Source: Ascidiella aspersa
Taxonomy: Eukaryota
DNA length: 64,000 nt
Assembly (NCBI GenBank): GCA_963924565.1
Contig: OZ004607.1
Span: forward strand, 27,962,001 to 28,026,000
Direction: 5' to 3'
Shown: positions 1,375 through 64,000 of the stretch, in pieces
Layout: each line of letters starts with the position of its first letter
How positions within the stretch are numbered: position 1 is the stretch's first letter
Notes under the pieces: generated by a model
Seen by the model: the letters and a program-made list of their open reading frames with translations, nothing else
Database searches by the model: none
What the model was told of the DNA's origin: nothing
Translations under genes and position numbers: made by a program

Positions 1375-1560
1375 CTAACTCTCAATCACGCTCTCAGGGG
1401 CGTACTGGTTCTTGTATGCCGCAAGTGGGTCGTACTCGCAGTACGCGCATGCGCACGAGACAATGTAAGGCATGACGTGTGTTGACCTTGAGCCGTCCGG
1501 ACAGGTCAAGGTCACGTTGCGGGTTTCGACGTCGTCCGGCTTGCAGCAGTGACAGTTGGT
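1375..1560 (-). CDS. Last coding exon: C-terminal half of CTCK plus stop
   Basis: TNCHCCKPDDVETRNVTLTCPDGS...SCACAYC...ES*; AG acceptor, phase 0. Confidence 0.92.
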   Translation of the reverse strand, partial: TNCHCCKPDDVETRNVTLTCPDGSRSTHVMPYIVSCACAYCEYDPLAAYKNQYAPESVIES

Positions 1561-4500
1561 CTGTTAACAATTATCTGGCTTTTTAGTCAAAGTCAACCTG
1601 TTTTGAAAATTAAGAATTTTTAAGCAATAAGAAAAAAATGTATCTCATAATAAATCAAGTTGAGTAAGCTATGCACAAATCGCAAATGTGAGCTCGAATG
1701 AGTATACCAAAGCCAAATAGGTCTATCAAATCTACATCATCTTAATGAAGAAGTCGCGATACTTATAGTACTATACTGTACTTGTATCACTATACAACTG
1801 TTCCGACTGTTGAAGTATGTATTGAAACGTTTTCGTAAAAATGATGTCGATTCTCACCACGTATTTGACTTTTGGTATTCGTATTCAAGCTCATATTAGA
1901 GACAAGTGCACAGTGAACTTGATTTATTAAATTATGAGATTTTTTCTTTATTACTTAACAATTCCCAATAACTACATTTCACAAACCACCTTAGTTTATA
2001 CATATCAGCAGTTTATTCAACTTAACCACAATGTTACAAACCTGAACAAAGGGCGGTTCGGACATCAAGGTCACGTTGGACTTGCATTGACCTTGACAAG
2101 CCGTGAGGGGTACCTCTCCGTCGCTCACGCATTCCCCGACCTGGACCACGCTGTTCAAAACGACAGGTGAGCAGTTCGATTCCGGGCGTTTCACTGTGAA
2201 CATTGAGAATACGATAAACATTTACAAATAAATAATTTCAAGGCGGTAAAGTGTAACCGCTAAGCGGGCGAAAACAGGGTTGTGTAATTTTTTGTTGAAA
2301 GTTGGACACATTAGGGTTTTAATGACATTTTTAATGAAACTGGTTATTTAAACCCTAATATGTGCACAGAACTATTTTTTGTTCTTTCATGATCAGTTAC
2401 TTTCATTAAAAAACGACTTCCAAGTCACTGCTATTAACAGCTAAAATGTTGTTCGGTCAAAATGACCTGATAACCTGACTTCAAACTAAGTTTGATTGTT
2501 GAACGACAAATGTATATTTTTCATTGAATTGTCTTAGGATTTGCAAATGAAAAAGCATTACGAATATACCATCAACTTATTTTGTCCATTTCAAATGGGT
2601 AAAAACGAAAAAAAATATTTTAAGCCTAATAACTTAATTGGACATGAGCTTGGGTCAATCGATAAACGTACACTTGCAAATGTATTTTTGTATATTGCTC
2701 AAGCCATTAATTTGATAATAAAGTAGAGTTGAAAAAAGAGAGTGGAGCTTTCCTCGAGTATTCCCAAAAAAATATGTCAAACGAGAGGAAATGCAACAAT
2801 TTTTTTTTAAACTCACCGCAAGTAGGACAGCATTCTCCCTCGGCGTACTCAAGCACGTGTGTCGCGCTGTCGCATGTCGCCGCTTCGCATGTCGTTTTCG
2901 CGCAGCTTACGCCGACTGTCGCATTGACGCAGGTGCAGGTCACGCAGCTGTCCACCGACCACGTCTGGCCATATTCCTTGAACTCTCCCTCGTACTCGCA
3001 CACTAGAAGATATGAAATAATTTTCTTTTTTTAATCAAATCTTTCGAGTAAGCGTATTTGATTTACTTAACAGGAATGCATAAGTGCTGTACATTTAAGG
3101 TAGTGATTCTCAACCGGGTGCCATTTCTAATGCCCAAGGGTGCCGAGAGATATTTGAGAATCTTTAAAAATCTGATTTTTGATCAACTCTTACAACTTTT
3201 TGTGTAAGATTACAGTGCAATAAATTCAATTAAAACTTCCTACGTTTTGCAGAGTTGGTGTGTGTTGTTCCAGTTCTGTTTATTGTGACATTCTAATGAA
3301 TTACCTACAGAAAAATCTTGTATTGATGCCGCCATCTATTTATTATTTCTGAGGGGTGTCGCAAGCCACAAAAGGTTGAGAACCACTGATTTAAGAAAAA
3401 GAAAAAGCAGGCTCTCTTTACACAGATAACAGCTCGTCTTGTTTCGCTAATTTGTTTTACCTATATATCTATTTAAAACTTTCAATACATTTATTCACCT
3501 TCACGCTCAAATACCAGTGCGAGTTACAGCCTATATTTTTTATATATAAAAGTTAGGTGCAAATGTTGAACATAAACACGTACTACAATATTGACAAACT
3601 TTCATACAACCGCATTTTATCAAAATTAAACCTTAACATATGTCATTTAACAGTGCCACCTGATTTCGAGAATTAAACGAATATCAACAAAGACCTATTT
3701 TATATGAATAGTCTGACTAAAGCGCGTGCCATGTAGCCTTCATACTTTTAAAGAGCAAATGTACAACGCATTTTTCCGACCTGTATCAAAGCAAGACAAG
3801 CCTTTAATCTCGCCCAGCCTAATAAATAGTTTTCTAAACGACATTTTAGGTTTAAGACAACGCCAGGTACAGATATTAACAACGGCTTTCGCGTTTACCT
3901 TGCGGGACGCACTTGCAGCACTCGTCCGACTCAGGGTCGTCCATCAGCACTTCGCCTTCCGAGCACGAGTCCTGGGTGAGTCGGCAAACCTTCGAGCAGT
4001 CCTGGCTGTTGTCCTCGCATCGGCAAACCTCACACTCGCTCTCCCATATGTTGTCGGGCTAAAGATAAAACAAAACAACGGGTTAGACCCAAATGTTGCC
4101 GCCATCTAGGCCGAGGCCTTTTACGCATGCAACTTTTTATTCTGTGCCAAAAAGCAAGGTTAAAAAAATTGCCTAAGGTGAGGAATGGTGGCCTTTAGAT
4201 AAAGCAAAACGACAGGTTATAGACCGTTGTCATCATATAGTCCCAATGTTGCCGTCATATAGTCCTAGACCTTTTACTTTTATTCTGCTTTTATTCTGTG
4301 CCAAACAGCAAGGTTAGAAAAAGCTGGTCTACGGTGAGGAGTGAACATATATTAAGCCTTTCCGTCTTTCTATTTACCATATTAGTTGATAGCTGTTGCA
4401 GCATTGCAATTGTCAATAAAGCTTTGGTACCTAAGTTTTTATAGTGAACTATATACATTCCTGTTTGTATCTTTATGGTTTATTGACATTTTAATAAACT

Positions 4501-7500
4501 GATGAGACCCCTTCCCCGGGTGAATGATTTTTCTTCAATGTTGAAGTTTTCCAAGCATTATTACCGTAATTTTATTCAATGGTTGTATTCTATTCAATCA
4601 TGTGTTAATCTGAAAACTATGTTCTAAATTACACCAACAGTTATCCAAGCAAAATGTTACCCTACCGCTGGTCGATTGTAATCGACGCCATCAATGACGC
4701 AGTTCGACTCGACAGGAACGGTCGTGGTCGCGACACCAGATGGCGTTGTCGAGCCAGACTTGGTGGTCGTTTCGCCGCCAGATAGCGTAGTTGAGCTCAC
4801 CACCGATTTAGTAGTGGTTCGCGCCACACCGCCGCTAGTGGTTGACTGGTAGCTAGATTTGGTTGTTACGTGGCCTGAAGAGGTTGTGGTTTGGTCAACT
4901 GGTCCAGTGGTGGTTGGTGCGGTAGTTGTAGTGGTGATGGTCACGTTGTACGGTGCGCAGTAACAGCATGTGCCTGGAATGGTGTTAGAAATTTTTGATA
5001 ATTTGTCTTGACGTCTACTCCAATGCGTCGCGTGAATACAGCAACAAAAAATCAGCAGTTGTTTTTCCTGTATTATTTTGCATCGGTGATGTATAAGGTT
5101 TAAATTTCTCAACGATAAGTATAGTTCAACGCTATTCAACAGTGTGGAAGTAAGATCTATGCGAAAATAACTGTGAGACTTAATTTAACTACAAATTTAA
5201 TATAGACGCATTTTTCGTTACTGACTTAGGTTAGACTAATTGTGTTTAATTTTCAGTTGATCTGCACTTCCTTTGACTCAAGCAAGCGAATAAAACACAT
5301 CAATGCAGTCAGGTGTAATGCAGTGGGCATCAACATTTTGATTTAAGCCAGACAAATATAAAGACTACGGTGTTCCGCAGAAATTCCAATTCTGTATCGA
5401 AATTTGTAAATCGAAGGTTTTAGGGTTGGCTTTGGTGACCGTTAAAAAATTATAAGCCATACTTCATGATAGTATTCTCGTACCTGGTACTTCGATGAAA
5501 CGCTGACCGAGCTCGTCACAGGCCTCTTGTGTGAGTCGGCATCTGTCGCTCTCGCAGTGTTCCTGTCCATCGAGGCACTGGCAGTACATGCAGTCGCCCT
5601 TCCAGTAGTACTCGCCCTCCTACAAACAAATGTCGGTGACAATGTAAAGAAATGAACCAGCCATGGGACTCGAACTCATGGCCTGGACTTGATCGCAGTC
5701 TTTTAAAAAGGCACCTTTAAAAAAGATTTATCGCAAACGAAACTTTTTACGATGTCAGAAGTTTGCAACGTGGAATGCATTGTTTCTAAACAATCCTTCT
5801 GATTGAACTTGATATTTACAGCGACAAAAAGCGTGGTTATACAAATAGGTTAGAATACTGGGAAGCAATTTAACCATATGCACTCCTGGTCCCTTAATAT
5901 TAAAATTTTTCGAAAGGCTGGTCGGCTAGACTTCAAACTTTTGGACATTTTGTAAAGCGCACCACCAACGAAACATGAAAAAGAAAAAATGATAGATTTA
6001 GGAAATGTTAATCGTTTTTAGTCTCTTTCAGAATGTGTTTACATGTGGTATGCAAAGTTTTGATTTGTGTTTTAGTCAAAATTATTTCGCAGAGTGATCA
6101 ATTTGATTACACATTTCACCGAAAAAACGGTGAAATTGGTAGTAGCCTACACATAATCACATATGGTCCCACGGGAAGAGCTATCGAATCGAACACGAGA
6201 AAGGGACTGGTTAATTTCCAAGCTGCAACTCTGCCGTCACACTGGCAGCCCTTTTATCCTAACAATTTATAAGCTCTACCAGGCCAATGACAAAGTTAAG
6301 TTACCGTGAACGTCCTTCCGTCGTAGACACAGCTTCGGTCGCAGTCCTTCTCGTACTGAATGCACTTGCGAGTGGAGGCGTCCTTGATAGATCCAGACTC
6401 GCACCCACACAAGTCGCATTCATTCGCTGGCTCAGTACCGCAGCGCGAAGGAAGCTGCCCTGTAGCACAACAAATGCAACCCGTTTTAATAAAACCGCCA
6501 TCGTTTTAGTCATCAGGTATTTATTGGGTGATGTGGTATCTTTCCCGAAAAATCGCAGAGCGTAAATAGCCGTTTACACTATAGCTGCGCTGAGCTGGGC
6601 GTGAAATTATTTACACTACAGCTGAGCTGAGCTGGGCGTGAAATTGCGTTTGGACCATGGCTGCGTAATTAAAAAAGCAAATTTAGTTTCACGTTACGAT
6701 GTCAGTCGAGCAAAGCGTGAAAATCGCTCCAAGGCGTAACTTTTTGCCAGCTGCACGGAGCTTGAGTTTAGCAAAGCGTGAAACGCTCGCCACAATAGAA
6801 ATCAAACGCAAATCTCGGTTTGCTAAGCTCAGCGCAGCTGTATTGTAAACGGATCTAAGGCGATTCATATTTAGAATTCGACCGTGCAGAAAACCAATGA
6901 AGATTTTTTCTGTTAAATATCGTGCGAGCTAACATTAATTTTATGCAAATCAGAATACTGAATTCATTTATGCTGTTGCTTGCTAGACGGGTTTAAAAGA
7001 TTGGCGTACGACCTCGGATCTCGTAGCTCAGCTCCATGTTGCAATCATTACAGAAAATCTCACCAAAATGACGCTAAAGTGCTATACGATTGGTTTGTTG
7101 CAAGGATTTAAAGAAATTCTGAAACATAGGTAAGGCTAAACCAGGTCTCGTACTGTTTATAATAAATAGAGAGCATGTTTTATAGGAAATCATTTGTATG
7201 TTAATACTTGCCTTTACCGAGAATCTTCTGATTCTCGCATGTGACGAAACACTTGCAATCCCAGGAACAAGTTTTGTTAACCTCCTCGGTGGTCATTGAA
7301 ACGGTGGTGGTCACTTGGAGCTGCAAGTTTGGTTAAAAGTTTTGTTTACATTTTACCACCGAGAGTAATATGGGTTAAGGTAATATACACAATACATACC
7401 GTTGTGGTTTCGGCAATACTTGATGACGTTGTCACCACTTCTGAACGTGTGGTTCCGGTGGTGGTTGTTTCGCCGGCCTTTGAAGAGGTCGTTTCACCAA

Positions 7501-58500: not shown

Positions 58501-61500
58501 ACAATTTATAAGTTAACAGTACTGTTCACAGAACGCAAACATCGACATGAACGAAGGACGCAAAAAAAGTAAAAAAACATCCGGCAGGTGTATGATGGCT
58601 TACCGGCACAATCTCTCCGTTATACAAGCACGGGCAGTTCTGTTCGTCGCTGCCGTCTGAGCAATGCTTTACACCGTCGCATAAGGTATCGTTCCTCACG
58701 CACTGATCGCACTGGTCGCATGCGAAGTAGCCGTCCTGGCACGCGCAAGACACCGGGGTGGTGCTTTCACTTACCGGGGCACTCTACAAAACAGAAAGCA
58801 GGTAGATTGCGGTTAAATCTTGTGACGTATAGGTAAGGCTGAGTGTTCCTAGTTGTTGCTTAGCGTGAGAATGAGTATGTGTCTTTCGTCTTTCATAACT
58901 GCATGCAGATGTCAACTTTTTCTTTTTGCTTTTTTGCTTTTTTGCTTTTTTTTACTTTTTTAGCAGTGTACTATCAAAATGGAAACATATACTTTTTCAG
59001 ATTGCTTATCGTAAGTGTAATATTAAGTGACATTAGGCTGTTATATCGAAAACGAAAAATTTCAGTATAAAACCCTATGCTCGCCCATAAAAAAGCAAAT
59101 ATATATGTTAGATATCTTATAAAAGTATGTTGGATATCTTAGACAATAGTATTTTGCTGTGTGTTGCTGTGAATCCCGTTATATTGTGCCGAGATTGCGA
59201 AACCTTTATTTGAGACCTGAAGTTCATCGTGTTTCGGTAACCTACAGCTTTAAATTTAGCTTCATGTGTTTTAAACTCCTTACAAAGGAACGTTTTTAAT
59301 AAACTTATTGGTATCCTATTTTACCGTGGTTGTTTGGGCGGCAGATGCAGTTGTAGTCGTCGATTCTGGTGTCGTGGTAACTGGAACAGTGGTGGTTACT
59401 TCTACAATATAAACACTTCGACTAAAATCCTAATTCTAGCAGTTCATAAACTAAAAACTGCCTGTCGTGTAGCACCATATAAACAAGAACATTAAGTTAA
59501 AAGCAAATATAATTTCTAATGGATCTAAAGGACCAGATTAAAACATGTCTAAAACAAAAAAAATACAGAATACTAGACAGAAATAAACTCAATGCTGTAG
59601 TAAGTGTAGCGAATGAAAGAAACAACTATCATGAATGTAAGCTATTTCTGAAGCAAGTACACCGCTCAGGAATAAAAACACCGCACATAAAGTAGGTCAC
59701 TACTTTACTGTAGAGGAGAAATAAAATAAAAATTGTATGGCGTCCGACATTCAAGAACAAAACCGAAAATGATTTTATTGGACATTTTTTTAAAAACAAT
59801 AAAACAGCTCCAAAGCAGTGCAGTAATCGGCGTATTTTTCACAAAAAATGAAATAGTTGTTTACTCTCAATGCAGTTATCAGCGGTTTCGAGGAAAATTA
59901 TGAACAGTACTCACGTTGTCTGCAGACGCAGCAGCCCTCCTCGTCGCTGGACATTGTCATGCCCTTGTCGCAAGCGGCGATGGTGCAGTAAGGAGCGCAC
60001 ATCAGCTGGGAATTGATGCACTCGCATCGAAGGCAAGTTCCCACCTCGATCATCTCACCAGCGGGCACAGCAACGCCTTGGTGTAAAATTAAGATATAAT
60101 GTATTTGTATTTGCCTTTTGTTTAAGTGAAGAAATCCTAATAGAGCTCTCGTTACGCAAGGTACATTTAAATTTATGGTAAGATTTCCGAAAGTTTACAT
60201 CGCGAAAGCTCTGAGTTACGTTTTATTTTCTAAAAGCAAATTTCTAACTCAATTAAAAAAAGGAAACATAGAACAATAAGAAAATACATTTTTACATTTT
60301 GTTTTTTAATCTAGCAAATTCAGCTTTTTACAGGTTAACCTAATGGAAATAATTAAGTAGGTATCCTATATGCACGGATCTGTAATGTAGCTTAAAATGA
60401 ATTGCTAATTCAAAAGGTCGAGTAATGTGTTAACTGAAGATGATACAAGTTCGTATCCAAATGTCCTAATTAAGATGATGTCGATCCTCTCGACCTTTTT
60501 TTCAATTTAAAAGTGTAATCATTTCCACAGTACGCAGTGTTCTCAAAAGCATGATGCAAAAACAGCTACTTATCCTAATGGTAAAGCCGTATGTAACTTT
60601 GCGCCAAAATAACAATTCACACCAACCGTTTTCCGTCACGCACGGACAAGATTCCACAGGGATGCACTTGTTAGTAACGTCATCGCGAGCCTCGCCCTCC
60701 TTGCAAGAACAACATTTGCCGCTTTCGTCATGAGCCGGCGACGTCTGGCACGTCATGTTGCGTCGGAGGTCGTCGCAAGTGGGCGTGCAAGTGCAGATGC
60801 CGTACTCTTCAGCTGAGAGAGTAACATATTAGATAACGTGTAACAAGGATCCATTGATGAAAGTCAATAGTTACTGAAAGGAGTTAAAATTCCCTCGTTC
60901 AAAAAAACATAGCTTATAGATGTTTTAGCAGCAAGCTAGCGACCGATTTATATATCAAAAGGCATACGTTATTTTAAGTTATTTAAAATATTTAATTGAT
61001 ATTAATCAAATCGTTTTTTTTTTTACTTTTTGCATTAATTATTATTCATACGAGCATTTTCGAACTGTTTCAACTTTCAACACTGTAATATTGTAGCTTA
61101 TGTGTTGGGGATCAATAGATTGTTCCGCATAATCTCATAGTAGTTTAAAAATGGCAATTTATTGGTTAGAGAAAATACAAACCTTTGAGAATTAAAGGTA
61201 GTAATACCTTTCCTATTCAATAAACCGTAATATATTTTACTAAACACTAATATTGTCAAAGGGCCGCCATCAACTTGCACCCCCAAACCAGGGCATTGTT
61301 TTTTTATTTTTAGGTACACAGAGAAAAACTCGGTTATGCATGCGTGGTGTTCTTCCATGAATCCATCAAATTCACACAAATGAAAACAATTGATACATGA
61401 TCTGTAAGTTATCCTGAATACAAACAAAAAAATCCTCTATGACAAAAACCTTAAAAACGAACAAGACCTACTCTCGTCGCAGAGCGGCGCAGTGCTGCTG

Positions 61501-64000
61501 GGCACAGTGGTTTCGACGCCAGCAATGGTGGTAGTTGTGGCGGGCTCAGTGACCGGGAAGGTGGTGGTAGGAATGCAAACTGGACAGCAGACCCCGGCCA
61601 CGCTAACGAGGCGCATGCCGGCCTCCTCGTCGCACTCGACCTGGGCGCACATGGCTGTGGCGCAGCGGATCTCGTTGTTGAAGCACGTGCATCGATCGCA
61701 CTCGCCCCGCTTCCAAGAGGTTCCGGGCTGAAAGGCGGTTTTAAGCGCGTGAGACAAACAAAACAAGGCAAAATGCTCGGATTCGAGCTGATATTTGGCT
61801 TGTACTGGTATAGAGCTGTCTTTTCGAGCGACAGTTGCAAAACCGTAGTTGTAGACGTCATCATTTAGAGCGATAAAACGTGACGTCATAAATCAGGTTT
61901 GTAATCCAAAAGCTTAACGTCGCAAACTATGCTTATGGGCGATTACTTTCGCAAGTGTAAAATGTGCCGTCAAAGTTGTATTTAAAATCCGGCTTGTGAC
62001 GTAACGGTGAAGCGTTACGTCATAAATAAACTTGGTTCCCATCTGTGGCACTTCTAATTCAAAAAGTGGCTGTACAAAGAAACAGATGTTTTTCAAAGAC
62101 AACCAGAACAAAAAACACGTTTAAAACGCAAACAACCTTTGTCAAAGGCAGAAACTTTCCATGCATTAATCCCATACCTCGTGAATTTCGCCGCTCTCGT
62201 CTTTGCAAGCGCAATCCATCGCTTCAACGCATTTCCCGTCTTCTCCCATGACCTTGGTGCCCGGGCATCCACATCCGGGAGTGCAGATCCTGGTCGTGAT
62301 GCAGAGCTCGCCGTCGTCCAGGAAGTTGCACTTGCGCGGGCACGGGTTGTAGCAGTGAACCGGTTCCTGGCCGTCGGGGCAAGCTGCAGAGAGTTGACAC
62401 ATATTATAAATTGCGCTCTGGAAAGGTAAATGGTTTTAGACACACTGTCTTTAGGGCGTGGGGCATAATAAGACTGTAGTATTTCAAGCAAATATGGCAG
62501 CGCTCTACCCTAACAGTATAGCAATCCGGAACTTTTTCCATTCAATTCAAATAATACGGTAGTATTTTTAAGTATTCTAGCTTGGAAATACTGTTGCCCT
62601 TGGCATGATTCTGTAAGACCATATGTAAAACCACTGCCTTGATCGGGATGAGTGTAACAGAGAGCAATAGACTTTATTTCGATGAAAACCTCTTGAGTTC
62701 TTCTCGAAAAGTTCTACCCCTTGGTAAAGCGACGGTACCTGTCCGGTATGGCCGGAGGTCGTGAGTTTGAACCTCACTGCATGCTAGTTGTTTTCCAGCT
62801 ATTTTTGCTTGCATCTTGATCGACTTATTCGGTTAATCTATCGAAGGCTATCGGTGTACAATGATAAAGAAGCCATTATCATTGATCGAAAATTTACTTA
62901 GGCGGGCTAGTTCACAGTTGTTGTACACGTATTTGAATATGTATCTTTCATTGATTATTTAGGTTTGTCATAATTTTGAAGTTCCCGCAACAAAGGATTT
63001 GCTGGTAAACATAAAGAGTGTGCAGTGTTGAAGCACTTACCCATTGTAGTGGTCGGTTCTGGCGTTGCCACGGTGGTGGTAACAGGCTTTGTTTCCTGAA
63101 AAGCAAAATTAATGTTTTCGAATATCAAAAAATCTTACAAACATGGTCAAGACTTGATGGCAAAATTGCTCATTCAATTATGTCAAAATTTTAACACTTT
63201 TATAGTTCCAAGTGGAAACATACACCTTTATTACCTCAGTCAATTGTCACTAAGCAGTTTTACTTGCATAAATCTATCGGGTTAGGCCACCAAATTTCAT
63301 TGGGTAAAGCGTTACCATGGTAGTGGTCGGTTCGGTTGCAGCTGGACTGGTCGTGGTCACCACAACTCCAGGCGTGGTCGTAGTCTCTTCCGGTTGGCAA
63401 GGATCCCCGGTGCATTTTAGCTGGCTTGCAACGCAGGTGCTGTCAAACGAACAAAGAAGTTGTTAAGAGAGCGTCATTTGCTTCTATTCAGCATACAGCC
63501 AATTTATGCCAATCTAATATTAACTTAATTTAACCGACTTTGTCAAATTTGAAAGGCGTAAGGCAGTTTGCTTCCGTGATATGTTTAGTCTTAATGATTT
63601 GCTTTTATAAACGTTGCTTGGAATTACATTTCAAACAAATCCATTGGTTCATTAATTGCTTTTAATGCAAATCAATTAACTTGCTATAGGGATAACCCGG
63701 ATTAGACAACGATGAATTTAACTAGGATCTGACTATTTACAAAAAATATTGTCGACAAAAGTTCGGCGAAATACCATATTGGAATAAAAGCATTTCAAAG
63801 TGACTGGCTTACAAAACTGGTTGTCTTAGCTAAAATTGTCCAATTTCCAGAAAATAAACCTTAATTAACAGTAAATTGTGAAGTATTTCGAATGCGTCCC
63901 CGACCAACACGCTTACTCACCACTGCATGCAGTTGTACGGGATCACGGCATCCGTTGGTATCACGAGGTCGCCGACCTTGCAAGGGCACTGCTGCCGCTC
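1375..64000 (-). CDS. Giant multi-exon secreted mucin-like protein (TIL/VWC/LDLa/11x F5/8C/PTS repeats/CTCK; hemolectin/SCO-spondin/gel-forming mucin-like), 5'-partial, 87 exons, ~8,170 aa in window
   Basis: Phase-compatible chain of GT-AG exons traced by hand; the spliced frame is open from 64000 to TAG at 1375-1377; domain motifs recognised from Cys spacing. Confidence 0.9.
2042..2193 (-). CDS. Exon: N-terminal half of CTCK
   Basis: NCSPVV...ECVSDGEVPLTACQGQCKS; phases 1/0. Confidence 0.9.
2817..3002 (-). CDS. Exon: VWC
   Basis: CEYEG..YGQTWSVDSCVTCTC...CCPTC; phases 1/1. Confidence 0.92.
3101..3388. mobile_element. hAT (Charlie-like) MITE
   Basis: Ends TAGTGATTCTCAACC / GGTTGAGAACCACTG; flanks ATTTAAGG/ATTTAAGA (7/8 TSD match). 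Confidence 0.75.
3899..4058 (-). CDS. Exon: VWC-like
   Basis: PDNIWESECEVCRC...DECCKC; phases 0/1. Confidence 0.9.
4088..4340. repeat. Degenerate intronic direct duplication (about 155-bp period)
   Basis: CCCA(A)ATGTTGCCG...TTTTATTCTGTGCCAAA.AGCAAGGTTA...GGTGAGGA occurs twice. Confidence 0.7.
4666..4973 (-). CDS. Exon: end of VWC, Thr/Ser-rich linker
   Basis: TCCYCAPYNVTITTTT...NCVIDGVDYNRPA; phases 1/0. Confidence 0.88.
5484..5619 (-). CDS. Exon: VWC-like
   Basis: EGEYYWKGDCMYCQCLDG; phases 0/1. Confidence 0.9.
6305..6459 (-). CDS. Exon: TIL-like
   Basis: CDLCGCESGSIKD..RKCIQYEKDCDRSCVYDG; phases 1/0. Confidence 0.88.
6568..6854. mobile_element. Palindromic MITE (PIF/Harbinger-like ends)
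   Basis: TIR of about 27 bp, CCGTTTACACTATAGCTGCGCTGAGCT vs AGCTCAGCGCAGCTGTATTGTAAACGG; internal repeats of GCTGAGCTGGGCGTGAAATT. Confidence 0.75.
7218..7320 (-). CDS. Exon: linker and start of TIL-like module
   Basis: LQVTTT...TCSWDCKCFVTCENQKIL; phases 0/1. Confidence 0.85.
7400..8317 (-). CDS. Exon: Thr-rich tandem repeats (GETTTTGMA / GETTTLKA)
   Basis: 306 codons; 27- and 24-bp units; phases 0/0. Confidence 0.9.
8394..8492 (-). CDS. Exon: VWC-like
   Basis: EGTEITQHSSCQVCTCINNSYECKTQCTLTCDK; phases 0/0. Confidence 0.87.
8675..8873 (-). CDS. Exon: end of 10-Cys module, Thr-rich linker
   Basis: SAIHVNGRCALAPTTESC...PICI; phases 2/0. Confidence 0.85.
9045..10118 (-). CDS. Exon: Thr-rich tandem repeats plus start of 10-Cys module
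   Basis: AGETTTTGM/AGETTTLK units then CPEECSCLLGC; phases 2/2. Confidence 0.9.
10268..10425 (-). CDS. Exon: VWC-like
   Basis: VNETYIRGDCEACVC...DVCC; phases 0/2. Confidence 0.9.
10551..10947. mobile_element. hAT MITE (same family as 29275-29673)
   Basis: Ends CAGTGCTTTTCAAC / GTTGACAACCACTG; flanks TTTTAAGT/TTTTAAAT; repeated GGTGTAC motifs. Confidence 0.72.
11257..11427 (-). CDS. Exon: TIL-like
   Basis: TCGDCACPSGSIKD..WNTSMCLHFETPCAEPC; phases 0/0. Confidence 0.88.
12073..12240 (-). CDS. Exon: end of VWC, linker, start of TIL-like module
   Basis: DVCCHCEAAPTT...LCPDKCTEYVTC; phases 0/0. Confidence 0.88.
12665..12861 (-). CDS. Exon: end of TIL-like module, VWC
   Basis: WETGMCLHYPESCDDCVVNGETFPVG...CEECAC; phases 1/0. 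Confidence 0.9.
13425..13562 (-). CDS. Exon: TIL-like
   Basis: CEQSCVHNLTCEELRN...LCMDCPCP; phases 1/1. Confidence 0.87.
14000..14181 (-). CDS. Exon: end of 10-Cys module, Thr-rich linker
   Basis: CRCPNSAQNVYDRANWRC..LCPGVTTT; phases 2/1. Confidence 0.87.
14546..15017 (-). CDS. Exon: 21-bp TTSAGQA repeats plus start of 10-Cys module
   Basis: Repeat array then CSQSCLCISNC; phases 1/2. Confidence 0.88.
15338..15403 (-). CDS. Exon: end of VWC
   Basis: DQCCACVATQATT; phases 1/1. Confidence 0.83.
15492..15629 (-). CDS. Exon: VWC core
   Basis: PTTWPEGDCYSCNCTPSGEQVC; phases 1/1. Confidence 0.88.
15918..16134 (-). CDS. Exon: C-terminal part of CBM32/galactose-binding-like domain
   Basis: WVEVAT...ARIFRLHVYGT...PEISEISF; phases 0/1. 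Confidence 0.85.
16638..17144. mobile_element. Intact hAT (Charlie-like) MITE, 507 bp
   Basis: TIR CAGTGGTTCTCAACC / GGTTGAGAACCACTG, perfect 8-bp TSD CTCTATAG, subterminal CCGGTCCG repeats. Confidence 0.92.
17242..17363 (-). CDS. Exon: middle of CBM32-like domain
   Basis: DMEFDLGYLYHVIRLRVDC; phases 1/0. Confidence 0.85.
17844..18023 (-). CDS. Exon: N-terminal part of CBM32-like domain
   Basis: SLAVDENSQTYWD; phases 1/1. Confidence 0.85.
18769..18960 (-). CDS. Exon: TIL-like module plus start of VWC
   Basis: CACVCDSDC...CSCPAGTVW...CPCEMDGKK; phases 1/1. Confidence 0.88.
18974..19278. mobile_element. hAT MITE abutting a splice acceptor
   Basis: Ends CACGGGGTCATCAA / TTAATGACCCCAG; flanks GAATAGGA/GAATAGGG; GGCCGGAT subterminal motifs. 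Confidence 0.65.
20072..20204 (-). CDS. Exon: LDL-receptor class A repeat
   Basis: [33 protein letters not shown]; phases 0/1. Confidence 0.9.
20402..20511 (-). CDS. Exon: short Cys module
   Basis: AVIESGQSLGHCYILYCDHSGQV...NC; phases 1/0. Confidence 0.85.
20651..20778 (-). CDS. Exon: end of LDLa
   Basis: CDGKKDCQDGTDEYDC...GCVYNGKIYEL; phases 2/1. Confidence 0.9.
21121..21214 (-). CDS. Exon: start of LDLa
   Basis: PCGTNMVRCDGTRCIPIKW; phases 1/2. Confidence 0.88.
21448..21709 (-). CDS. Exon: VWC plus linker
   Basis: VGVTWSTGVCSSCTC...CCPDC; phases 0/1. Confidence 0.9.
22238..22261. repeat. (AAT)n microsatellite
   Basis: About 8 AAT units. Confidence 0.85.
22399..22599 (-). CDS. Exon: VWC
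   Basis: MDAVWTTGECTMCKC...VCCSC; phases 0/0. Confidence 0.9.
22688..22982. mobile_element. MITE with 8-bp TSD (hAT-like)
   Basis: Ends CAGGGGCCGATCC / GAATCCGCCCCTG; flanks CTGTGGAT/CTGTGAAT. Confidence 0.75.
23273..23449 (-). CDS. Exon: VWC
   Basis: FGDKVEEGTCTTCMC...QCCYC; phases 0/0. Confidence 0.9.
23965..24152 (-). CDS. Exon: TIL
   Basis: CTEPFVPTACGCSKTCQNP...CVCPEG...CIMPEECPC; phases 1/0. Confidence 0.92.
24222..24329 (-). CDS. Exon: Thr/Ser-rich linker
   Basis: VTSSSSASLTTT...; phases 1/1. Confidence 0.8.
24688..25833 (-). CDS. Exon: 54-bp tandem repeats (SMPGHETTTTVGGPVSTT)
   Basis: About 18 near-perfect 18-aa units; phases 1/1. Confidence 0.9.
25905..25944 (-). CDS. 40-nt micro-exon
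   Basis: EVPTTTVSTTTPT; phases 0/1, needed to keep the frame. Confidence 0.8.
26017..26117 (-). CDS. Exon: truncated VWC
   Basis: ERWSPDECTECICFNNKPRC; phases 1/0. Confidence 0.87.
26274..26462 (-). CDS. Exon: TIL
   Basis: CTPPMIQTNCTSC...CCECGENTFFDGATCVEASECSC; phases 1/1. Confidence 0.9.
26775..27034. mobile_element. Fold-back MITE (near full-length imperfect palindrome)
   Basis: ATATCGTCACGTTCATAAC...AAGTCAT... mirrored by ...ATGACTT...GTTATGAGCGTGACGATAT over more than 100 bp. Confidence 0.8.
27188..27556 (-). CDS. Exon: LDLa plus 21-bp GMVSTT(S/P) repeats
   Basis: [34 protein letters not shown]; phases 1/1. Confidence 0.92.
27936..28099 (-). CDS. Exon: VWC
   Basis: GAVWEPSPCETCTC...CCPVC; phases 2/1. 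Confidence 0.9.
28152..28330. repeat. GACTT-rich dispersed repeat fragment
   Basis: CAGTGTTGTTATGACTTAAGTCA...GACTTGACTT; similar to 52218-52565. Confidence 0.6.
28473..28614 (-). CDS. Exon: linker and start of VWC
   Basis: EATTTTS...PCMGCEAFG; phases 1/2. Confidence 0.85.
28848..29005 (-). CDS. Exon: VWC
   Basis: YPSGGVWSPNNCTTCKC...GCCYC; phases 2/1. Confidence 0.9.
29275..29673. mobile_element. hAT MITE (inverted relative to 10551-10947)
   Basis: Ends CAGTGCTTGTCAACCG / CGGTTGAAAAGCACTG; 6/8 TSD match. Confidence 0.72.
29834..30008 (-). CDS. Exon: TIL
   Basis: CGCNITC...CMPGCYCPEGTFQDGQKCITKATCPC; phases 1/2. Confidence 0.92.
30301..30367 (-). CDS. Exon: Thr-rich linker
   Basis: GSGVTTKPVVSTTRLATTTTPI; phases 0/1. 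Confidence 0.8.
30629..30735 (-). CDS. Exon: Ser/Thr-rich linker
   Basis: TTTQPSSGTTT...; acceptor position (AAG) inferred from phase. Confidence 0.7.
31271..31472 (-). CDS. Exon: VWC
   Basis: TCEECYCTDEGVTC...GCCHC; phases 0/1. Confidence 0.88.
31935..32134 (-). CDS. Exon: TIL
   Basis: CTGSKVFHPCPCSLTC...CECPEG...CPCYYNG; phases 1/0. Confidence 0.92.
32739..32937 (-). CDS. Exon: end of 10-Cys module, linker
   Basis: ECSCPDPGMDRANGRCGVYPDC; phases 0/1. Confidence 0.87.
33502..33665 (-). CDS. Exon: linker and start of 10-Cys module
   Basis: CADECNCTMGCQDAGDC; phases 1/0. Confidence 0.87.
34102..34296 (-). CDS. Exon: complete 10-Cys module
   Basis: CNLTCYCMYGC...CSC...GRC...QC; phases 1/1. 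Confidence 0.88.
34768..34876 (-). CDS. Exon: end of VWC, linker
   Basis: LEGECCPSCVPASTT; phases 0/1. Confidence 0.87.
35285..35410 (-). CDS. Exon: VWC core
   Basis: NDPCMMCFCLTGKIMC; phases 0/0. Confidence 0.88.
35804..35999 (-). CDS. Exon: TIL
   Basis: CEEPFIFYECMPGCDRQC...CTPGCACP...CPC; phases 2/0. Confidence 0.92.
36767..36894 (-). CDS. Exon: C-terminal half of VWC-like module, linker
   Basis: TPCDSIC...DDCCTC; phases 0/2. Confidence 0.87.
36943..36999 (-). CDS. Candidate optional 57-nt exon
   Basis: TTTCCAG acceptor, GTAAGT donor, phases 0/0, open frame NNRYGTFLTISVLQDTIVV; would leave a 48-nt intron. Confidence 0.45.
37120..37640 (-). CDS. Exon: PTS region
   Basis: Thr/Ser-rich, ends ATCE; phases 1/0. 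Confidence 0.88.
37946..38135 (-). CDS. Exon: end of F5/8C #11
   Basis: AIRLVPKTWTVSPAIRLELTGC; phases 0/1. Confidence 0.9.
38648..39036 (-). CDS. Exon: F5/8C #11 (type B)
   Basis: CDKEMG...SWMP...FVQVDF...FDGNTD; phases 1/0. Confidence 0.92.
39481..40251 (-). CDS. Exon: complete F5/8C #10 (type A) plus PTS
   Basis: CDEAMGMES..IPDDAISASS...SWSP...TQG...LRVEFRGC; phases 1/1. Confidence 0.93.
40372..40906 (-). CDS. Exon: PTS region
   Basis: Thr/Ser-rich; phases 0/1. Confidence 0.88.
41272..41505 (-). CDS. Exon: end of F5/8C #9
   Basis: VFEANVDD...PRTWDGETPSLRADVIGC; phases 0/0. Confidence 0.9.
41889..42050 (-). CDS. Exon: middle of F5/8C #9
   Basis: IDFDTPVTAMEVLTQG...WTSSY; phases 0/0. 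Confidence 0.9.
42268..42428 (-). CDS. Exon: start of F5/8C #9
   Basis: ASSNPELAHNAKI...AWNP..DDNPSWLQ; phases 1/0. Confidence 0.9.
42720..43323 (-). CDS. Exon: end of F5/8C #8 plus PTS
   Basis: VFPANIDD...ISLRVELHGC; phases 0/1. Confidence 0.9.
43510..43835 (-). CDS. Exon: F5/8C #8 (type A)
   Basis: CDEKMGMQNREIPDSDINASS...SWSP...TQGGENGEFV; phases 1/0. Confidence 0.92.
43883..44268 (-). mobile_element. Insertion flanked by a 16-bp direct repeat (possible retroposon)
   Basis: CCGTTAGACATCCGAG at 43883 and 44253; short T run next to the left copy. Confidence 0.45.
44327..46303 (-). CDS. 1,977-nt exon: F5/8C #6 (A), #7 (B) and PTS
   Basis: Two complete discoidin motifs in the 679-aa ORF; phases 1/1. 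Confidence 0.94.
46429..49317 (-). CDS. 2,889-nt exon: F5/8C #4 (A), #5 (B), PTS with 27-bp and 72-bp repeats
   Basis: 959-aa ORF; phases 1/1. Confidence 0.94.
49608..49721 (-). CDS. Exon: PTS linker
   Basis: GGVAHTTTPVTQTETT; phases 1/1. Confidence 0.82.
49968..50235 (-). CDS. Exon: PTS linker
   Basis: EETTTPEGFTT...; phases 0/1. Confidence 0.85.
51126..51296 (-). CDS. Exon: end of F5/8C #3
   Basis: VRIVPMAWHKNILLRVDLLGC; phases 0/0. Confidence 0.9.
51700..51822. mobile_element. DNA-transposon end fragment (GGAGTCGGA-type)
   Basis: GGAGTCGGACTCGG repeats ending CCGACTCCGCGGCCCTG; left end unclear. Confidence 0.45.
51927..52121 (-). CDS. Exon: middle of F5/8C #3
   Basis: ITFVQPVVISDVLIQGGGDQGWVTKFAVEASKDG; phases 0/0. 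Confidence 0.9.
52218..52565. repeat. GACTT-rich dispersed repeat (MITE-like)
   Basis: CGGTGTTGTAATGACTTAAGTCA...GACTTGACTTG; alignable with 28152-28330. Confidence 0.6.
53213..53439 (-). CDS. Exon: start of F5/8C #3 (type B)
   Basis: CRHEMGL...SASS...GRLN...AWAP...QYLE; phases 1/0. Confidence 0.9.
53907..54125 (-). CDS. Exon: PTS with 27-bp TTTPAGEIT repeats
   Basis: Thr-rich; phases 1/1. Confidence 0.85.
54337..54618 (-). CDS. Exon: end of F5/8C #2
   Basis: RIRVFP...ISLRIEVHGC; phases 1/1. Confidence 0.9.
55170..55523 (-). CDS. Exon: F5/8C #2 (type A)
   Basis: CDDALGMESGKIED...SWSP...TQGGEDGGFV; phases 1/1. Confidence 0.92.
55689..55991. mobile_element. hAT MITE
   Basis: Ends CAGCCTTTCTTAACC / GGTTAAGAACCACTG; flanks GTCTATTT/GACTATTT. 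Confidence 0.72.
56083..56346 (-). CDS. Exon: end of F5/8C #1
   Basis: Near-identical to 54337-54618; phases 1/1. Confidence 0.9.
56641..56994 (-). CDS. Exon: F5/8C #1 (type A)
   Basis: Near-identical to 55170-55523; phases 1/1. Confidence 0.92.
57104..57303 (-). CDS. Exon: end of VWC, PTS
   Basis: CCSCEKAVATTT; phases 2/1. Confidence 0.87.
57886..58013 (-). CDS. Exon: VWC core
   Basis: NEDSWAVSECERCTCENG; phases 0/2. Confidence 0.88.
58604..58783 (-). CDS. Exon: LDLa
   Basis: CQDGYFAC...LCDGVKHCSDGSDEQNC; phases 0/0. Confidence 0.9.
59325..59401 (-). CDS. Exon: Thr-rich linker
   Basis: VTTTVPVTTTPESTTTT; phases 1/0. Confidence 0.82.
59915..60076 (-). CDS. Exon: VWC
   Basis: GTCLRCECINSQLMC...GCCVC; phases 1/1. 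Confidence 0.88.
60627..60812 (-). CDS. Exon: TIL
   Basis: YGICTCTPTCDDL...CCSCKEG...CIPVESCPC; phases 1/1. Confidence 0.88.
61472..61727 (-). CDS. Exon: VWC plus linker
   Basis: PGTSWKRGECDRCTC...CCPVC; phases 0/1. Confidence 0.9.
62178..62383 (-). CDS. Exon: TIL
   Basis: CPDGQEPVHCYNPCPRKC...CTPGCGCP...CVEAMDCAC; phases 1/0. Confidence 0.92.
62717..62802 (+). mobile_element. tRNA-derived SINE fragment
   Basis: A-box-like TGGTAAAGCGACGG and B-box-like GTTTGAACC; inverted homologue at about 32670-32722. Confidence 0.55.
63041..63095 (-). CDS. 55-nt exon: Thr-rich linker
   Basis: ETKPVTTTVATPEPTTTM; phases 0/1. Confidence 0.8.
63316..63439 (-). CDS. Exon: end of VWC-like (E) module, linker
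   Basis: TCVASQLKCTGDPCQPEETT; phases 2/0. Confidence 0.87.
63921..64000 (-). CDS. Exon truncated by window edge: end of TIL, start of VWC-like module
   Basis: ERQQCPCKVGD...YNCMQ; GTGAGT donor, phase 2. Confidence 0.87.

What the first reader, a model, noticed from the sequence alone, without database searches (positions are those of the whole stretch)
1375..64000. Giant (>8,100 aa) lectin-armed mucin with an architecture I cannot match to a named family
Seen: one open spliced frame combining TIL, VWC, 4 LDLa, 11 F5/8C, at least 7 distinct PTS repeat arrays and a CTCK, with no VWD and no TSP1 (WxxWxxCS) motif in about 8,170 aa. Known: SCO-spondin has many TSP1 repeats and one F5/8C; insect hemolectin has about two F5/8C; MUC2/5AC/5B have a D4 VWD before VWC-CTCK and no discoidins. 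Inference: a lineage-specific polymer-forming mucin with many embedded binding domains, e.g. for a mucus filter net, adhesive or clot.
Basis: partly seen in the sequence, partly recalled or inferred. Interest (0 to 1): 0.8.

Follow-up and report, generated by a model that had tools for sequence, protein, structure and literature searches.

The report
Giant sea-squirt hemocytin-like discoidin mucin
The window holds most of one very large sea-squirt gene for a secreted, sugar-coated, chain-forming protein studded with 11 discoidin binding domains. It is a much-enlarged member of an old animal family (hemocytin-like, SCO-spondin-related mucin-like proteins), not an unclassifiable new design.

Summary
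All lie on the minus strand, ending in a cystine knot (CTCK), a stop at 1375-1377 and an AATAAA at 1185. I confirmed 11 F5/8C (discoidin) domains, 4 LDLa, about 8-9 TIL, 17 VWC, 8 tandem PTS arrays (about 4,100 PTS residues) and no TSP1.

"No VWD" is a window-edge artefact. The gene continues about 18 kb past base 64000 with four EGF-like modules, three VWD-C8-TIL units and CGLCG motifs in D1 and D3. That is the polymerising head of mucins, VWF, hemocytin and SCO-spondin.

The architecture can be matched:
- Two partial Ciona intestinalis models ("hemocytin-like", "mucin-5AC-like") are colinear with window 62.4-27.4 kb.
- A Saccoglossus protein shares the module order.
- A complete 3,267-aa Actinia protein has the same module set from D1-D3 to CTCK.
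- 7-8 kaa mollusc "mucins" carry 3 VWD, F5/8C arrays, PTS and CTCK.

A separate, true SCO-spondin orthologue lies on another chromosome.

New here are the scale (about 9-10 kaa), 11 discoidins of two alternating types, TIL-VWC-PTS cassettes where relatives have CysD, and no D4/D5.

I obtained no RNA evidence and did not join exons. Tissue, ligand and function are untested. Other notes of this scan describe different giant VWD genes in this genome.

The parts
1375..1377 (-). stop codon (TAG) ending the gene; AATAAA 190 nt further 3' at 1185
1378..1563 (-). CTCK, C-terminal exon (CHCC...SCAC)
   Evidence: Pfam Cys_knot 6.5e-6; 46% identical to the Actinia P0286 CTCK
1994..2221 (-). CTCK, N-terminal exon (ORF piece holding CQGQC)
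   Evidence: read from the sequence
2803..2982 (-). VWC
   Evidence: Pfam VWC 9.5e-11; local HMM
3897..4055 (-). VWC
   Evidence: local HMM 9e-14
5482..5616 (-). VWC
   Evidence: Pfam 0.0015; local HMM 1e-11
7453..8247 (-). PTS tandem array (27/51/78-nt units)
8382..8486 (-). VWC
   Evidence: local HMM 2e-11
9216..10030 (-). PTS tandem array (27/51-nt units)
10267..10446 (-). VWC-like
   Evidence: local HMM 2e-5
14689..14905 (-). PTS tandem array (21-nt unit)
15508..15624 (-). VWC-like
   Evidence: local HMM 4e-6
15811..18054 (-). three open frames that another reader took for a galactose-binding-like domain; whether they are coding, and what fold they have, is unsupported
   Evidence: no Pfam hit; no significant PDB sequence hit
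18785..18964 (-). TIL-like (weak)
   Evidence: local HMM 4e-4
20079..20174 (-). LDLa #4
   Evidence: Pfam 2.2e-6
20739..21257 (-). LDLa #3, split over two exons
   Evidence: Pfam 0.0045 and 2.4e-4 on the two halves; DCQDGTDE core
21557..21718 (-). VWC
   Evidence: Pfam 3.5e-5
22435..22599 (-). VWC
   Evidence: local HMM 1e-14
23297..23479 (-). VWC
   Evidence: Pfam 0.0058; local HMM 6e-19
23983..24165 (-). TIL
   Evidence: Pfam 1.8e-5
24771..25778 (-). largest PTS tandem array (54-nt unit, 18.6 copies)
25984..26112 (-). VWC
   Evidence: Pfam 3e-4
26275..26478 (-). TIL
   Evidence: local HMM 3e-19
27238..27398 (-). PTS tandem array (21/63-nt units), same exon as LDLa #2
27447..27548 (-). LDLa #2
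   Evidence: motif; 63% identical to Ciona P0151 and 50% to Saccoglossus P0124
27934..28098 (-). VWC
   Evidence: Pfam 2.4e-10
28840..29031 (-). VWC
   Evidence: Pfam 1e-5
29839..30015 (-). TIL
   Evidence: Pfam 7.5e-6
31305..31448 (-). VWC-like
   Evidence: local HMM 2.5e-7; Ciona colinear
31947..32147 (-). TIL
   Evidence: local HMM 2e-21
32881..33621 (-). two small unassigned Cys-rich modules, conserved with Ciona (60-71% identity)
   Evidence: no Pfam hit
34103..34330 (-). unassigned 10-Cys module; the best-conserved stretch of the protein
   Evidence: 78% identical to Ciona; 39% to Saccoglossus; no Pfam hit; weak IMPI/TIL-like PDB hit, E 0.27
35288..35425 (-). VWC
   Evidence: Pfam 2.3e-4
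35816..36013 (-). TIL
   Evidence: local HMM 6.5e-24
37114..37647 (-). non-repetitive PTS stretch after the discoidin array
38070..39031 (-). F5/8C #11 (type B), two exons
   Evidence: Pfam 1e-11
39755..40246 (-). F5/8C #10 (type A)
   Evidence: Pfam 3e-16
41365..42411 (-). F5/8C #9 (type B), three exons
43177..43830 (-). F5/8C #8 (type A), two exons
   Evidence: Pfam 1.1e-6
45060..45518 (-). F5/8C #7 (type B)
   Evidence: Pfam; PDB factor V C domain 3e-24
45810..46298 (-). F5/8C #6 (type A)
   Evidence: Pfam 2.6e-34 for the exon; PDB hits
46595..46985 (-). PTS tandem array (72-nt unit)
47567..48028 (-). F5/8C #5 (type B)
48351..48720 (-). PTS tandem array (27/54-nt units)
48833..49312 (-). 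F5/8C #4 (type A)
51114..53392 (-). F5/8C #3 (type B), three exons
   Evidence: Pfam 1.8e-6 on the middle exon
53971..54057 (-). PTS tandem array (27-nt unit)
54491..55518 (-). F5/8C #2 (type A), two exons
   Evidence: Pfam 2.1e-6
56219..56989 (-). F5/8C #1 (type A), two exons; recent duplicate of #2
   Evidence: Pfam 3.3e-7 and 0.0015; 90% aa identity to #2
57891..58022 (-). VWC
   Evidence: Pfam 1.2e-5
58628..58747 (-). LDLa #1
   Evidence: Pfam 4.4e-5
59907..60101 (-). VWC
   Evidence: Pfam 1.2e-4
60628..60807 (-). TIL-like
   Evidence: local HMM 1e-6; 65% identical to Ciona P0037
61560..61766 (-). VWC
   Evidence: Pfam 1.1e-8
62193..62402 (-). TIL
   Evidence: Pfam 3.6e-8
63277..63462 (-). 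first PTS exon after the D3 unit
63968..64000 (-). 3' end of TIL-3 of the D3 unit, which runs on past the window edge. The rest of the gene (EGF x4, VWD-C8-TIL x3, candidate start) lies at G000:C1:28026001-28044434
   Evidence: Pfam TIL 6.5e-11 on L001:2420-2794

Best explanation
The window holds the 3' four-fifths of one minus-strand gene of about 81 kb, at about G000:C1:27,963,375-28,044,400. It encodes a secreted protein of roughly 9,000-10,000 residues.

Domain order:
1. A possible EMI domain and four EGF-like modules.
2. D1-D2-D'-D3, that is three VWD-C8-TIL units, with CGLCG in D1 and D3.
3. PTS, then TIL-VWC-TIL-VWC-LDLa-VWC.
4. Eleven discoidin (F5/8C) domains of two alternating types, each followed by a PTS linker.
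5. A long tail of TIL-VWC-PTS cassettes with three more LDLa and some unassigned Cys-rich modules.
6. VWC modules and a CTCK.

Family. It is the ascidian member, much enlarged, of an old metazoan family of VWD/F5-8C/LDLa/TIL-VWC/CTCK mucin-like proteins. That family includes insect hemocytin/hemolectin and the large mollusc F5/8C 'mucins', and is the sister group of SCO-spondin.

How it most likely works (inferred from what is established for VWF and gel-forming mucins). Tail-to-tail disulfide dimers form through the CTCK. Head-to-head multimers form through the D1-D3 assembly. This gives long covalent chains or nets. About 4,100 PTS residues carry dense O-glycans that stiffen and hydrate the chain. 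The 11 discoidin and 4 LDLa domains are then displayed at intervals as a multivalent binding surface that catches or cross-links ligands such as glycans, membranes, collagen-like fibres or microbes.

Use. My guess is an epithelial mucus or gel (pharyngeal/endostyle or gut), about 45%. Second is a blood-cell or tunic clot or adhesive in the manner of hemocytin, about 35%. Neither was tested.
For: Shown here:
- Domains and strand.
- Upstream D1-D3, EGFs and CGLCG motifs.
- A single CTCK with stop and polyA signal at the 3' end.
- No TSP1, no CysD and no further VWD in the window.
- No coding gap longer than about 3 kb, and all modules on one strand.

Orthologue evidence:
- Ciona XP_018672814.2 'hemocytin-like' is colinear with 62366->51921, with abutting query coordinates. 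This links the TIL-VWC-LDLa modules to the discoidin array.
- Ciona XP_026696163.1 'mucin-5AC-like' is colinear with 49312->27447 at 29-78% identity. This links the array to the TIL/VWC/LDLa tail.
- Saccoglossus P0124 has the same order and continues past LDLa #2 with TIL-PTS-VWC.
- The complete Actinia P0286 (3 VWD, 3 C8, 6 TIL, 7 LDLa, 1 F5/8C, 4 VWC, PTS, CTCK) matches both ends of the gene: D3 at 48-57% identity and CTCK at 46%.
- Hemocytins and 6.3-7.9 kaa mollusc proteins share EGF-D1-D3, then F5/8C, then CTCK.

Literature: Lang et al. 2016 describe the F5/8C-bearing invertebrate mucin-like group and its closeness to SCO-spondin.

Discoidin type: both types are closest to factor V/VIII C domains and neuropilin b1.
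Against:
- Exons were never joined, so continuity of the frame is inferred.
- The C-terminal third (about 26 kb to 1.4 kb) has only architectural support, not orthologue-model support.
- The 5' end is unsettled. The only good ATG with a signal peptide (bases 82434-82363 if window numbering is continued, donor AAG|GTAAGT) is out of phase with the obvious acceptor of the next exon.
- The EMI assignment rests on a motif and small-database BLAST hits only. Pfam is silent on it.
- Per-exon trees leave the gene in an unresolved polytomy on a long branch.
- Ligands of the discoidin domains, the tissue of expression and polymer formation are all inferred.
Confidence: 0.75

Rival explanations
1. The window holds several adjacent genes on the same strand, which the reader stitched together. 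For example: a VWD-headed gene, a discoidin-PTS gene and a TIL/VWC/CTCK gene.
For: No RNA evidence was obtained. NCBI's Ciona annotation splits the orthologous region into at least two models. The region from 26 kb to 1.4 kb has no orthologue model covering it. With many GT/AG sites, an open spliced frame can nearly always be drawn.
Against: - The two Ciona models are plainly truncated. One starts inside a PTS/TIL module, and the other starts with an artificial Met in a PTS stretch and ends right after an LDLa.
- Together those two models bridge both borders of the discoidin array.
- Only one CTCK and one stop/polyA are seen, at the 3' end.
- No signal-peptide exon was noticed inside the window, though I did not search it systematically.
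- Single annotated proteins in Actinia, Saccoglossus, molluscs and arthropods carry the same modules in the same order.
Confidence: 0.1
2. It is the ascidian SCO-spondin, the Reissner-fibre protein, with its thrombospondin repeats replaced by PTS.
For: It has an EMI-like N-terminus whose second exon hits only SCO-spondin N-termini among 279 stored proteins. It has three VWD units, LDLa, F5/8C, many TIL/VWC modules and a CTCK. The summed similarity of the D1-D3 exons is as high to SCO-spondins as to any group.
Against: A different gene at G000:C4:10,279,106-10,320,904 is colinear with lamprey SCO-spondin from residue 22 to 6126. Its D3 is 58-64% identical, and it has a TSP1 exon and a CTCK. The present gene has no TSP1. 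It falls outside the well-supported vertebrate SCO-spondin clade in the C8-3 tree. Its D3 is only about 45-49% identical to SCO-spondins.
Confidence: 0.03
3. Functional rival: it works like insect hemocytin/hemolectin. That is, it is released by blood cells or the epidermis/tunic to form a clot or adhesive that entraps microbes or seals wounds, and is not an epithelial mucus.
For: The closest named relatives are hemocytins, and NCBI names the Ciona fragment hemocytin-like. The discoidin domains resemble those of the clotting factors V/VIII. Related proteins occur in limpet adhesive mucus (PMC7333891).
Against: About half the protein is PTS. The hemocytins examined have little or none. The two extra VWD units of hemocytin are missing. 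There are no expression data either way.
Confidence: 0.35

Closest known systems
Ciona intestinalis XP_018672814.2 'hemocytin-like' (757 aa) and XP_026696163.1 'mucin-5AC-like' (2,281 aa); automatic models, uncharacterised
   Same: Colinear, exon by exon, with window 62366->51921 and 49312->27447 (29-78% identity). Same module order, including alternating type A and type B discoidins, the unassigned Cys modules and LDLa #1 and #2.
   Different: They are fragments, with no VWD head or CTCK in either model. They show at least 7 discoidins against 11 here. They come from a different genus, to judge by the identity level.
Insect and arthropod hemocytin/hemolectin (for example Priapulus XP_014665852.1 and Strigamia T1JAC2; family as described by Lang et al. 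2016)
   Same: N-terminal EGF modules, three VWD-C8-TIL units, F5/8C domains after D3, an LDLa, VWC modules and a CTCK. D1-D3 is colinear.
   Different: Hemocytin has two further VWD-C8-TIL units (a 3+2 layout), CysD modules in most non-insect forms, CCP modules at the N-terminus, little or no PTS, and 2-6 discoidins. Here the layout is 3+0, with no CysD, about 4,100 PTS residues and 11 discoidins.
Mollusc giant F5/8C 'mucin-5AC-like' proteins (for example Haliotis rufescens XP_048245088.1, 7,888 aa; Dreissena, Pinctada, Mactra 7.1-7.6 kaa)
   Same: EGF plus three VWD units only (3+0), arrays of F5/8C separated by PTS, LDLa, VWC and CTCK, and a similar overall size.
   Different: They carry 12-16 CysD (WxxW) modules between the PTS stretches. 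This gene has none and uses TIL-VWC cassettes instead. They show no EMI-like start.
Actinia tenebrosa 'mucin-2-like' (P0286, 3,267 aa) and Saccoglossus kowalevskii LOC100375992 (P0124, partial)
   Same: Same module set with no CysD and no TSP1: 3 VWD-C8-TIL, PTS, LDLa, TIL-VWC, F5/8C, TIL-VWC-PTS cassettes and CTCK. Saccoglossus shares the run TIL-VWC-TIL-VWC-LDLa-VWC-F5/8C and the unassigned Cys module.
   Different: The Actinia protein is a third of the size, with one discoidin and seven LDLa. Neither protein has been characterised.
SCO-spondin
   Same: EMI-like start (inconclusive), three VWD units, LDLa, F5/8C, many TIL/VWC modules and a CTCK. Lang et al. 2016 find invertebrate mucin-like proteins closest to SCO-spondin.
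   Different: SCO-spondin has 16-20+ TSP1 repeats, a block of about 10 LDLa and no PTS. This gene has none of the first and only 4 scattered LDLa. The genome has its own SCO-spondin orthologue elsewhere.
Vertebrate gel-forming mucins (MUC2/5AC/5B) and VWF
   Same: D1-D2-D'-D3 head with CGLCG motifs, central PTS, and a VWC and CTCK tail. Presumably the same polymerisation logic.
   Different: It has no CysD and no D4 VWD. No furin site was seen between D2 and D'. It has discoidin, LDLa and EGF modules that those proteins lack.

Membership tests
VWF / gel-forming-mucin type polymer proteins | N-terminal D1-D2-D'-D3 (three VWD-C8-TIL units) | tested here: met
   Three VWD, three C8 and the TILs lie on the minus strand just upstream of the window. 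They are colinear with hemocytin, mollusc and Actinia D1-D3.
VWF / gel-forming-mucin type polymer proteins | C-terminal cystine knot (CTCK) for dimerisation | tested here: met
   Pfam Cys_knot 6.5e-6 on the last exon, followed by a stop.
VWF / gel-forming-mucin type polymer proteins | CGLCG-type motifs in the D assemblies | tested here: met
   CGLCG is present in D1 and D3; D2 has CGLYN.
Gel-forming mucins in the strict sense (MUC2/5/6/19 type) | long central PTS domains | tested here: met
   8 tandem arrays and about 4,130 PTS residues.
Gel-forming mucins in the strict sense (MUC2/5/6/19 type) | CysD (Mucin2_WxxW) modules within the PTS region | tested here: not met
   Best E-value 0.39 with a CysD HMM that finds 13 and 21 copies in the control proteins.
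Gel-forming mucins in the strict sense (MUC2/5/6/19 type) | D4 VWD before the VWC-CTCK tail (MUC2/5AC/5B, VWF) | tested here: not met
   There are no VWD hits in the window by Pfam genome scan or by BLAST with hemocytin D4/D5.
Hemocytin / hemolectin (Lang et al. 2016: 3+2 VWD with F5/8C) | F5/8C domains following the third VWD-C8-TIL unit | tested here: met
   11 F5/8C domains downstream of D3.
Hemocytin / hemolectin (Lang et al. 2016: 3+2 VWD with F5/8C) | two further VWD-C8-TIL units after the F5/8C region | tested here: not met
Hemocytin / hemolectin (Lang et al. 2016: 3+2 VWD with F5/8C) | N-terminal EGF (with CCP) modules before VWD1 | tested here: inconclusive
   There are four EGF-like exons. 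Three have Pfam support (E 3e-7 to 3e-4) and one is weak (0.048). Their best matches are hemocytin and mollusc N-terminal EGFs. No CCP was seen by eye, and I did not test for it with a model.
Hemocytin / hemolectin (Lang et al. 2016: 3+2 VWD with F5/8C) | blood-cell expression, lectin or clotting activity | not testable with these tools
SCO-spondin | many thrombospondin type 1 repeats | tested here: not met
   No motif. No Pfam TSP_1 hit in the gene (partial scoring). The same regex finds 16-20 in SCO-spondins.
SCO-spondin | N-terminal EMI domain | tested here: inconclusive
   There is a CC-x-G-Y-x-G-x-x-C motif, and BLAST hits go only to SCO-spondin residues 87-199 (E about 4e-5 in a 279-protein database). 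Pfam finds nothing on either half-exon.
SCO-spondin | being the genome's orthologue of vertebrate SCO-spondin | tested here: not met
   Another gene, on C4 at 10.279-10.321 Mb, is colinear with lamprey SCO-spondin over residues 22-6126 and is more similar.
Animal discoidin (F5/8C) domains | Pfam F5_F8_type_C over the curated cut-off, with flanking Cys pair | tested here: met
   Seven exon pieces, covering nine of the 11 domains, score over the 28.2-bit cut-off. The five single-exon copies begin with CD..M and end in G-C, and the copies split over exons show the same start or end where aligned. The closest PDB sequences are factor V/VIII C domains and neuropilin b1.

The most novel reading that the evidence does not exclude
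Ascidians took an ancient, modest VWD/F5-8C/LDLa mucin-like protein and built it into a polymer subunit of about 10,000 residues. In it, A/B pairs of discoidin domains are spaced along a glycosylated rod, and TIL-VWC cassettes replace CysD modules as cross-linking nodes. This would be a purpose-built multivalent capture net, for example the feeding mucus of the pharynx. It would also hold a short 10-Cys module, conserved from hemichordates to ascidians, that belongs to no described domain family.
Probability: 0.2. Interest if true: 0.6.

Novelty: new variant of a known kind. Interest (0 to 1): 0.4.

Why it matters
[quoted passage not shown] How the vertebrate set of VWD polymers (mucins, VWF, SCO-spondin, otogelin) arose from invertebrate ones is still unclear.

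This gene shows that an ascidian keeps a true SCO-spondin alongside a greatly enlarged hemocytin-like, F5/8C-bearing mucin. That mucin shares modules with both lineages.

It gives a concrete candidate for the material of ascidian mucus, tunic or clots. It is also a natural example of many binding domains strung along a mucin rod.

It is not a new kind of protein, and its function is unknown.

Tried and rejected

Steps left out on instruction:
There was therefore no whole-protein Pfam scan, no structure prediction and no full-length tree. Sizes are given as brackets.

Analyses that led nowhere:
- Per-exon maximum-likelihood trees (C8-3 and VWD3 start) separate the gene from FCGBP/zonadhesin (100/100 and 95/88). 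They leave it unresolved among SCO-spondin, hemocytin and mucins.
- Summed BLAST scores of the D1-D3 exons do not discriminate between those groups either.
- The EMI domain got no Pfam support.
I could not test it as a whole.
- The unassigned 10-Cys module gives only a non-significant IMPI/TIL hit.
- Lang et al. 2007 (PNAS) is not held in the paper library.
- The endostyle transcriptome and atlas papers do not mention this protein.

Hypothesis rejected:
- 'It is SCO-spondin' was rejected after I found the chromosome-4 orthologue.
Full report
**What is in the window**

The window is G000:C1:27,962,001-28,026,000 of a 308-Mb assembly. The coding signal is on the minus strand.

- F5_F8_type_C, E down to 2.6e-34.
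- VWC, LDLa and TIL.
- A cystine knot in the last exon, 1378-1563, E 6.5e-6. It is followed by TAG at 1375-1377 and AATAAA at 1185.

HMMs built locally from the Pfam-confirmed copies place the following:
- 11 complete discoidin domains between 56989 and 38070.
- 8 TIL modules, plus the tail of one more at the window edge.
- 17 VWC modules.

There are no plus-strand hits at the same thresholds.

There are four LDLa domains. Tandem Repeats Finder gives eight PTS arrays. A composition scan gives 37 PTS segments, about 4,130 residues.

There is no TSP1 motif and no Pfam TSP_1 hit inside the gene in a genome-wide scan (only 150 of 970 candidates were scored). There is no CysD: best E 0.39, while the same model finds 13 and 21 copies in control proteins.

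The supported coding span in the window is 7,089 aa. The upper bound from whole open frames is 9,078 aa.

No whole-protein search, fold or exact length is therefore given.

The gene runs off the window. In the next 18 kb on the same strand (loci L004, L005) lie, in 5'-to-3' order:
- four EGF-like exons;
- VWD1-C8-TIL;
- VWD2-C8-TIL;
- a TIL';
- VWD3-C8-TIL.

Pfam gives VWD at 9e-16 and C8 at 1e-22. CGLCG is present in D1 and D3. The TIL of the third unit straddles base 64000. "No VWD" is therefore an edge artefact. The protein has the D1-D2-D'-D3 head that defines the VWF/mucin/hemocytin/SCO-spondin group.

Before the EGFs there are two exons with an EMI-like pattern. The second, ending ...ACCDGYTGDTC, hits only SCO-spondin N-termini among 279 stored proteins. 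Pfam does not confirm it.

A good ATG with a signal peptide and a consensus donor lies about 18.4 kb beyond the window's end (base 82434 if window numbering is continued). Its phase does not fit the obvious acceptor of the next exon. The 5' end is therefore unsettled.

**One gene or several**

I kept those bases out of every later call.

Indirect evidence favours one gene:

1. Ciona intestinalis XP_018672814.2, named hemocytin-like by NCBI, is colinear with 62366->51921. The order is TIL, VWC, TIL, VWC, LDLa #1, VWC, PTS, discoidin A, PTS, discoidin B. Query coordinates abut from exon to exon.
2. Ciona XP_026696163.1 (mucin-5AC-like) is colinear with 49312->27447. It runs from discoidins through TIL/VWC, three unassigned Cys modules, more TIL/VWC and LDLa #2, at 29-78% identity.
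3. A partial Saccoglossus protein has the same run TIL-VWC-TIL-VWC-LDLa-VWC-F5/8C. It matches TIL (32.1 kb), TIL (30.0 kb) and LDLa #2 (27.5 kb) in order, then continues with TIL-PTS-VWC as the window does.
4. A complete Actinia protein (3,267 aa) has 3 VWD, 3 C8, 6 TIL, 7 LDLa, 1 F5/8C, 4 VWC, PTS and CTCK. It matches both the D1-D3 head (D3 48-57% identical) and the CTCK exon (46%) of this gene.

There is one CTCK and one stop/polyA. No gap between recognisable modules exceeds about 3 kb. I put one gene at about 0.85-0.9.

**Which family**

A search of 1.84 billion representative proteins with discoidins #6-#7 gave these as best hits:
- a coral protein with 12 discoidin domains;
- the Ciona cluster;
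- hemocytin-like proteins (Priapulus, Strigamia);
- an amphioxus protein;
- mollusc "mucin-5AC-like" proteins of 4.7-7.9 kaa.

The mollusc giants have EGF, exactly three VWD units, at least seven F5/8C domains, PTS and CTCK, but also 12-16 CysD modules. Two of them carry LDLa among their precomputed Pfam domains.

Lang et al. 2016 (PMC4948705) make four relevant points:
- they describe insect hemolectin as 3 VWD-C8-TIL + F5/8C + 2 VWD-C8-TIL;
- they call F5/8C characteristic of lophotrochozoan mucin-like proteins;
- they count 17 multi-VWD proteins in Ciona;
- they find invertebrate mucin-like proteins closest to SCO-spondin.

The D1-D3 exons here are about equally similar to SCO-spondins, hemocytins and F5/8C mucins. 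They are slightly less similar to MUC5AC/MUC2 and much less similar to FCGBP/zonadhesin. Per-exon trees agree but do not resolve further.

The gene is not the SCO-spondin orthologue. A different gene at C4:10,279,106-10,320,904 is colinear with lamprey SCO-spondin from residue 22 to 6126, with D3 58-64% identical.

The best description is the ascidian member of the hemocytin-like, F5/8C-bearing mucin-like family. It departs from that family as follows:
- no D4/D5 units;
- no CysD;
- a possible EMI start;
- four dispersed LDLa;
- TIL-VWC-PTS cassettes;
- 11 discoidins.

**The discoidin array**

The domains fall into two types. Type A comprises #1, 2, 4, 6, 8 and 10. Type B comprises #3, 5, 7, 9 and 11. 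From #2 onward they alternate strictly.

The Ciona models also alternate A-B, so the A-B pair is the ancestral unit.

#1 and #2 are a recent duplicate. They are 90% identical in protein. Their first exons are 92% identical in DNA, while the introns differ in length, 276 against 545 nt.

Both types are animal-type discoidins, closest to factor V/VIII C domains and neuropilin b1. Known relatives bind membranes, peptides, collagen or sugars. "Lectin" is therefore a guess.

**How it probably works**

This section is inferred from what is established for VWF and gel-forming mucins.
- CTCK-mediated tail-to-tail dimers and D1-D3-mediated head-to-head disulfide multimers would give long chains or nets.
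- No furin site was seen between D2 and D'. In that respect it resembles mucins rather than VWF.
- The PTS half of the protein would be densely O-glycosylated and extended.
- The discoidin and LDLa domains would be displayed along it as multivalent binding sites.
- The TIL-VWC cassettes would act as disulfide-rich spacers or nodes.

Whether the product is feeding or gut mucus, a tunic component or a blood-cell clot is unknown. The endostyle papers I could search do not mention it.

**Left open**
- The first exon.
- The EMI assignment.
- Whether the three frames at 15.8-18.1 kb are exons of an extra β-sandwich domain. They have no Pfam or PDB support.
- The nature of the best-conserved stretch of the protein, a 10-Cys module at 34330-34103. 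It is 78% identical to Ciona and 39% to Saccoglossus. It has no Pfam family and only a non-significant TIL-like hit.

**Verdict**

The "no VWD" and "no family" parts are not. This is a new, much-enlarged variant of a known kind, already present as unnamed fragments in public Ciona annotation. It is of moderate interest for the evolution of chordate extracellular polymers.

Noticed in passing
G000:C4:10279106-10320904 (loci L010-L015), minus strand: A gene colinear with lamprey SCO-spondin from residue 22 (EMI) to 6126 (CTCK), with D3 58-64% identical. It is apparently the true SCO-spondin orthologue of this genome, in only about 42 kb.
   Followed up: partly
window 34103-34330 (-), also 33502-33621 and 32881-32943: Short Cys-rich modules with no Pfam family. 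The first (10 Cys) is the most conserved stretch of the whole protein: 78% identical to Ciona and 39% to Saccoglossus. It is possibly a degenerate TIL or an undescribed module.
   Followed up: partly
window 54326-56989 (-): The exon pairs of discoidins #1 and #2 are near-identical: the first exon of each pair is 92% identical in DNA and the second, with its PTS, 80%. The introns between the exons differ in length, 276 against 545 nt. This fits either a recent duplication with fast intron turnover or gene conversion limited to exons.
   Followed up: partly
window 15811-18054 (-): A 3.2-kb interval between a TIL-like and a VWC module holds three open frames (72, 81 and 128 aa) with β-sandwich-like motifs. 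None has Pfam or PDB sequence support, so they may be an unrecognised domain or just a long intron.
   Followed up: partly
window 1-1000 (+) and G000:C1:27902633-27909732, 27940616-27941662: The DNA just 3' of the gene is repeated downstream. One copy is 89% identical, 21 kb away. Three copies at 79% identity are spaced exactly 3,034 bp apart, which indicates a tandem 3-kb unit.
   Followed up: no
G000:C1:32587088-32587786 (+): A 665-aa open frame with two F5/8C domains, 4.6 Mb from this gene. It may be a paralogue with the same discoidin-PTS-discoidin exon design. Many more F5/8C exons cluster on C4 at 8.4-10.1 Mb.
   Followed up: no
G000:C2:13884173-14004188: More than 40 TSP1 exons within 120 kb, nearly all on the plus strand, with no VWD hit nearby. 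This looks like a very large thrombospondin-repeat gene or gene cluster.
   Followed up: no
L005:8363-8434 (-), about 18.4 kb beyond the window's end: An ATG with a textbook signal peptide (MEKMIYVAFAIGALLSLARA|Q) and an AAG|GTAAGT donor. It is out of phase with the strong acceptor of the following EMI-like exon, so a small exon or a different start may be missing.
   Followed up: partly
   Followed up: no
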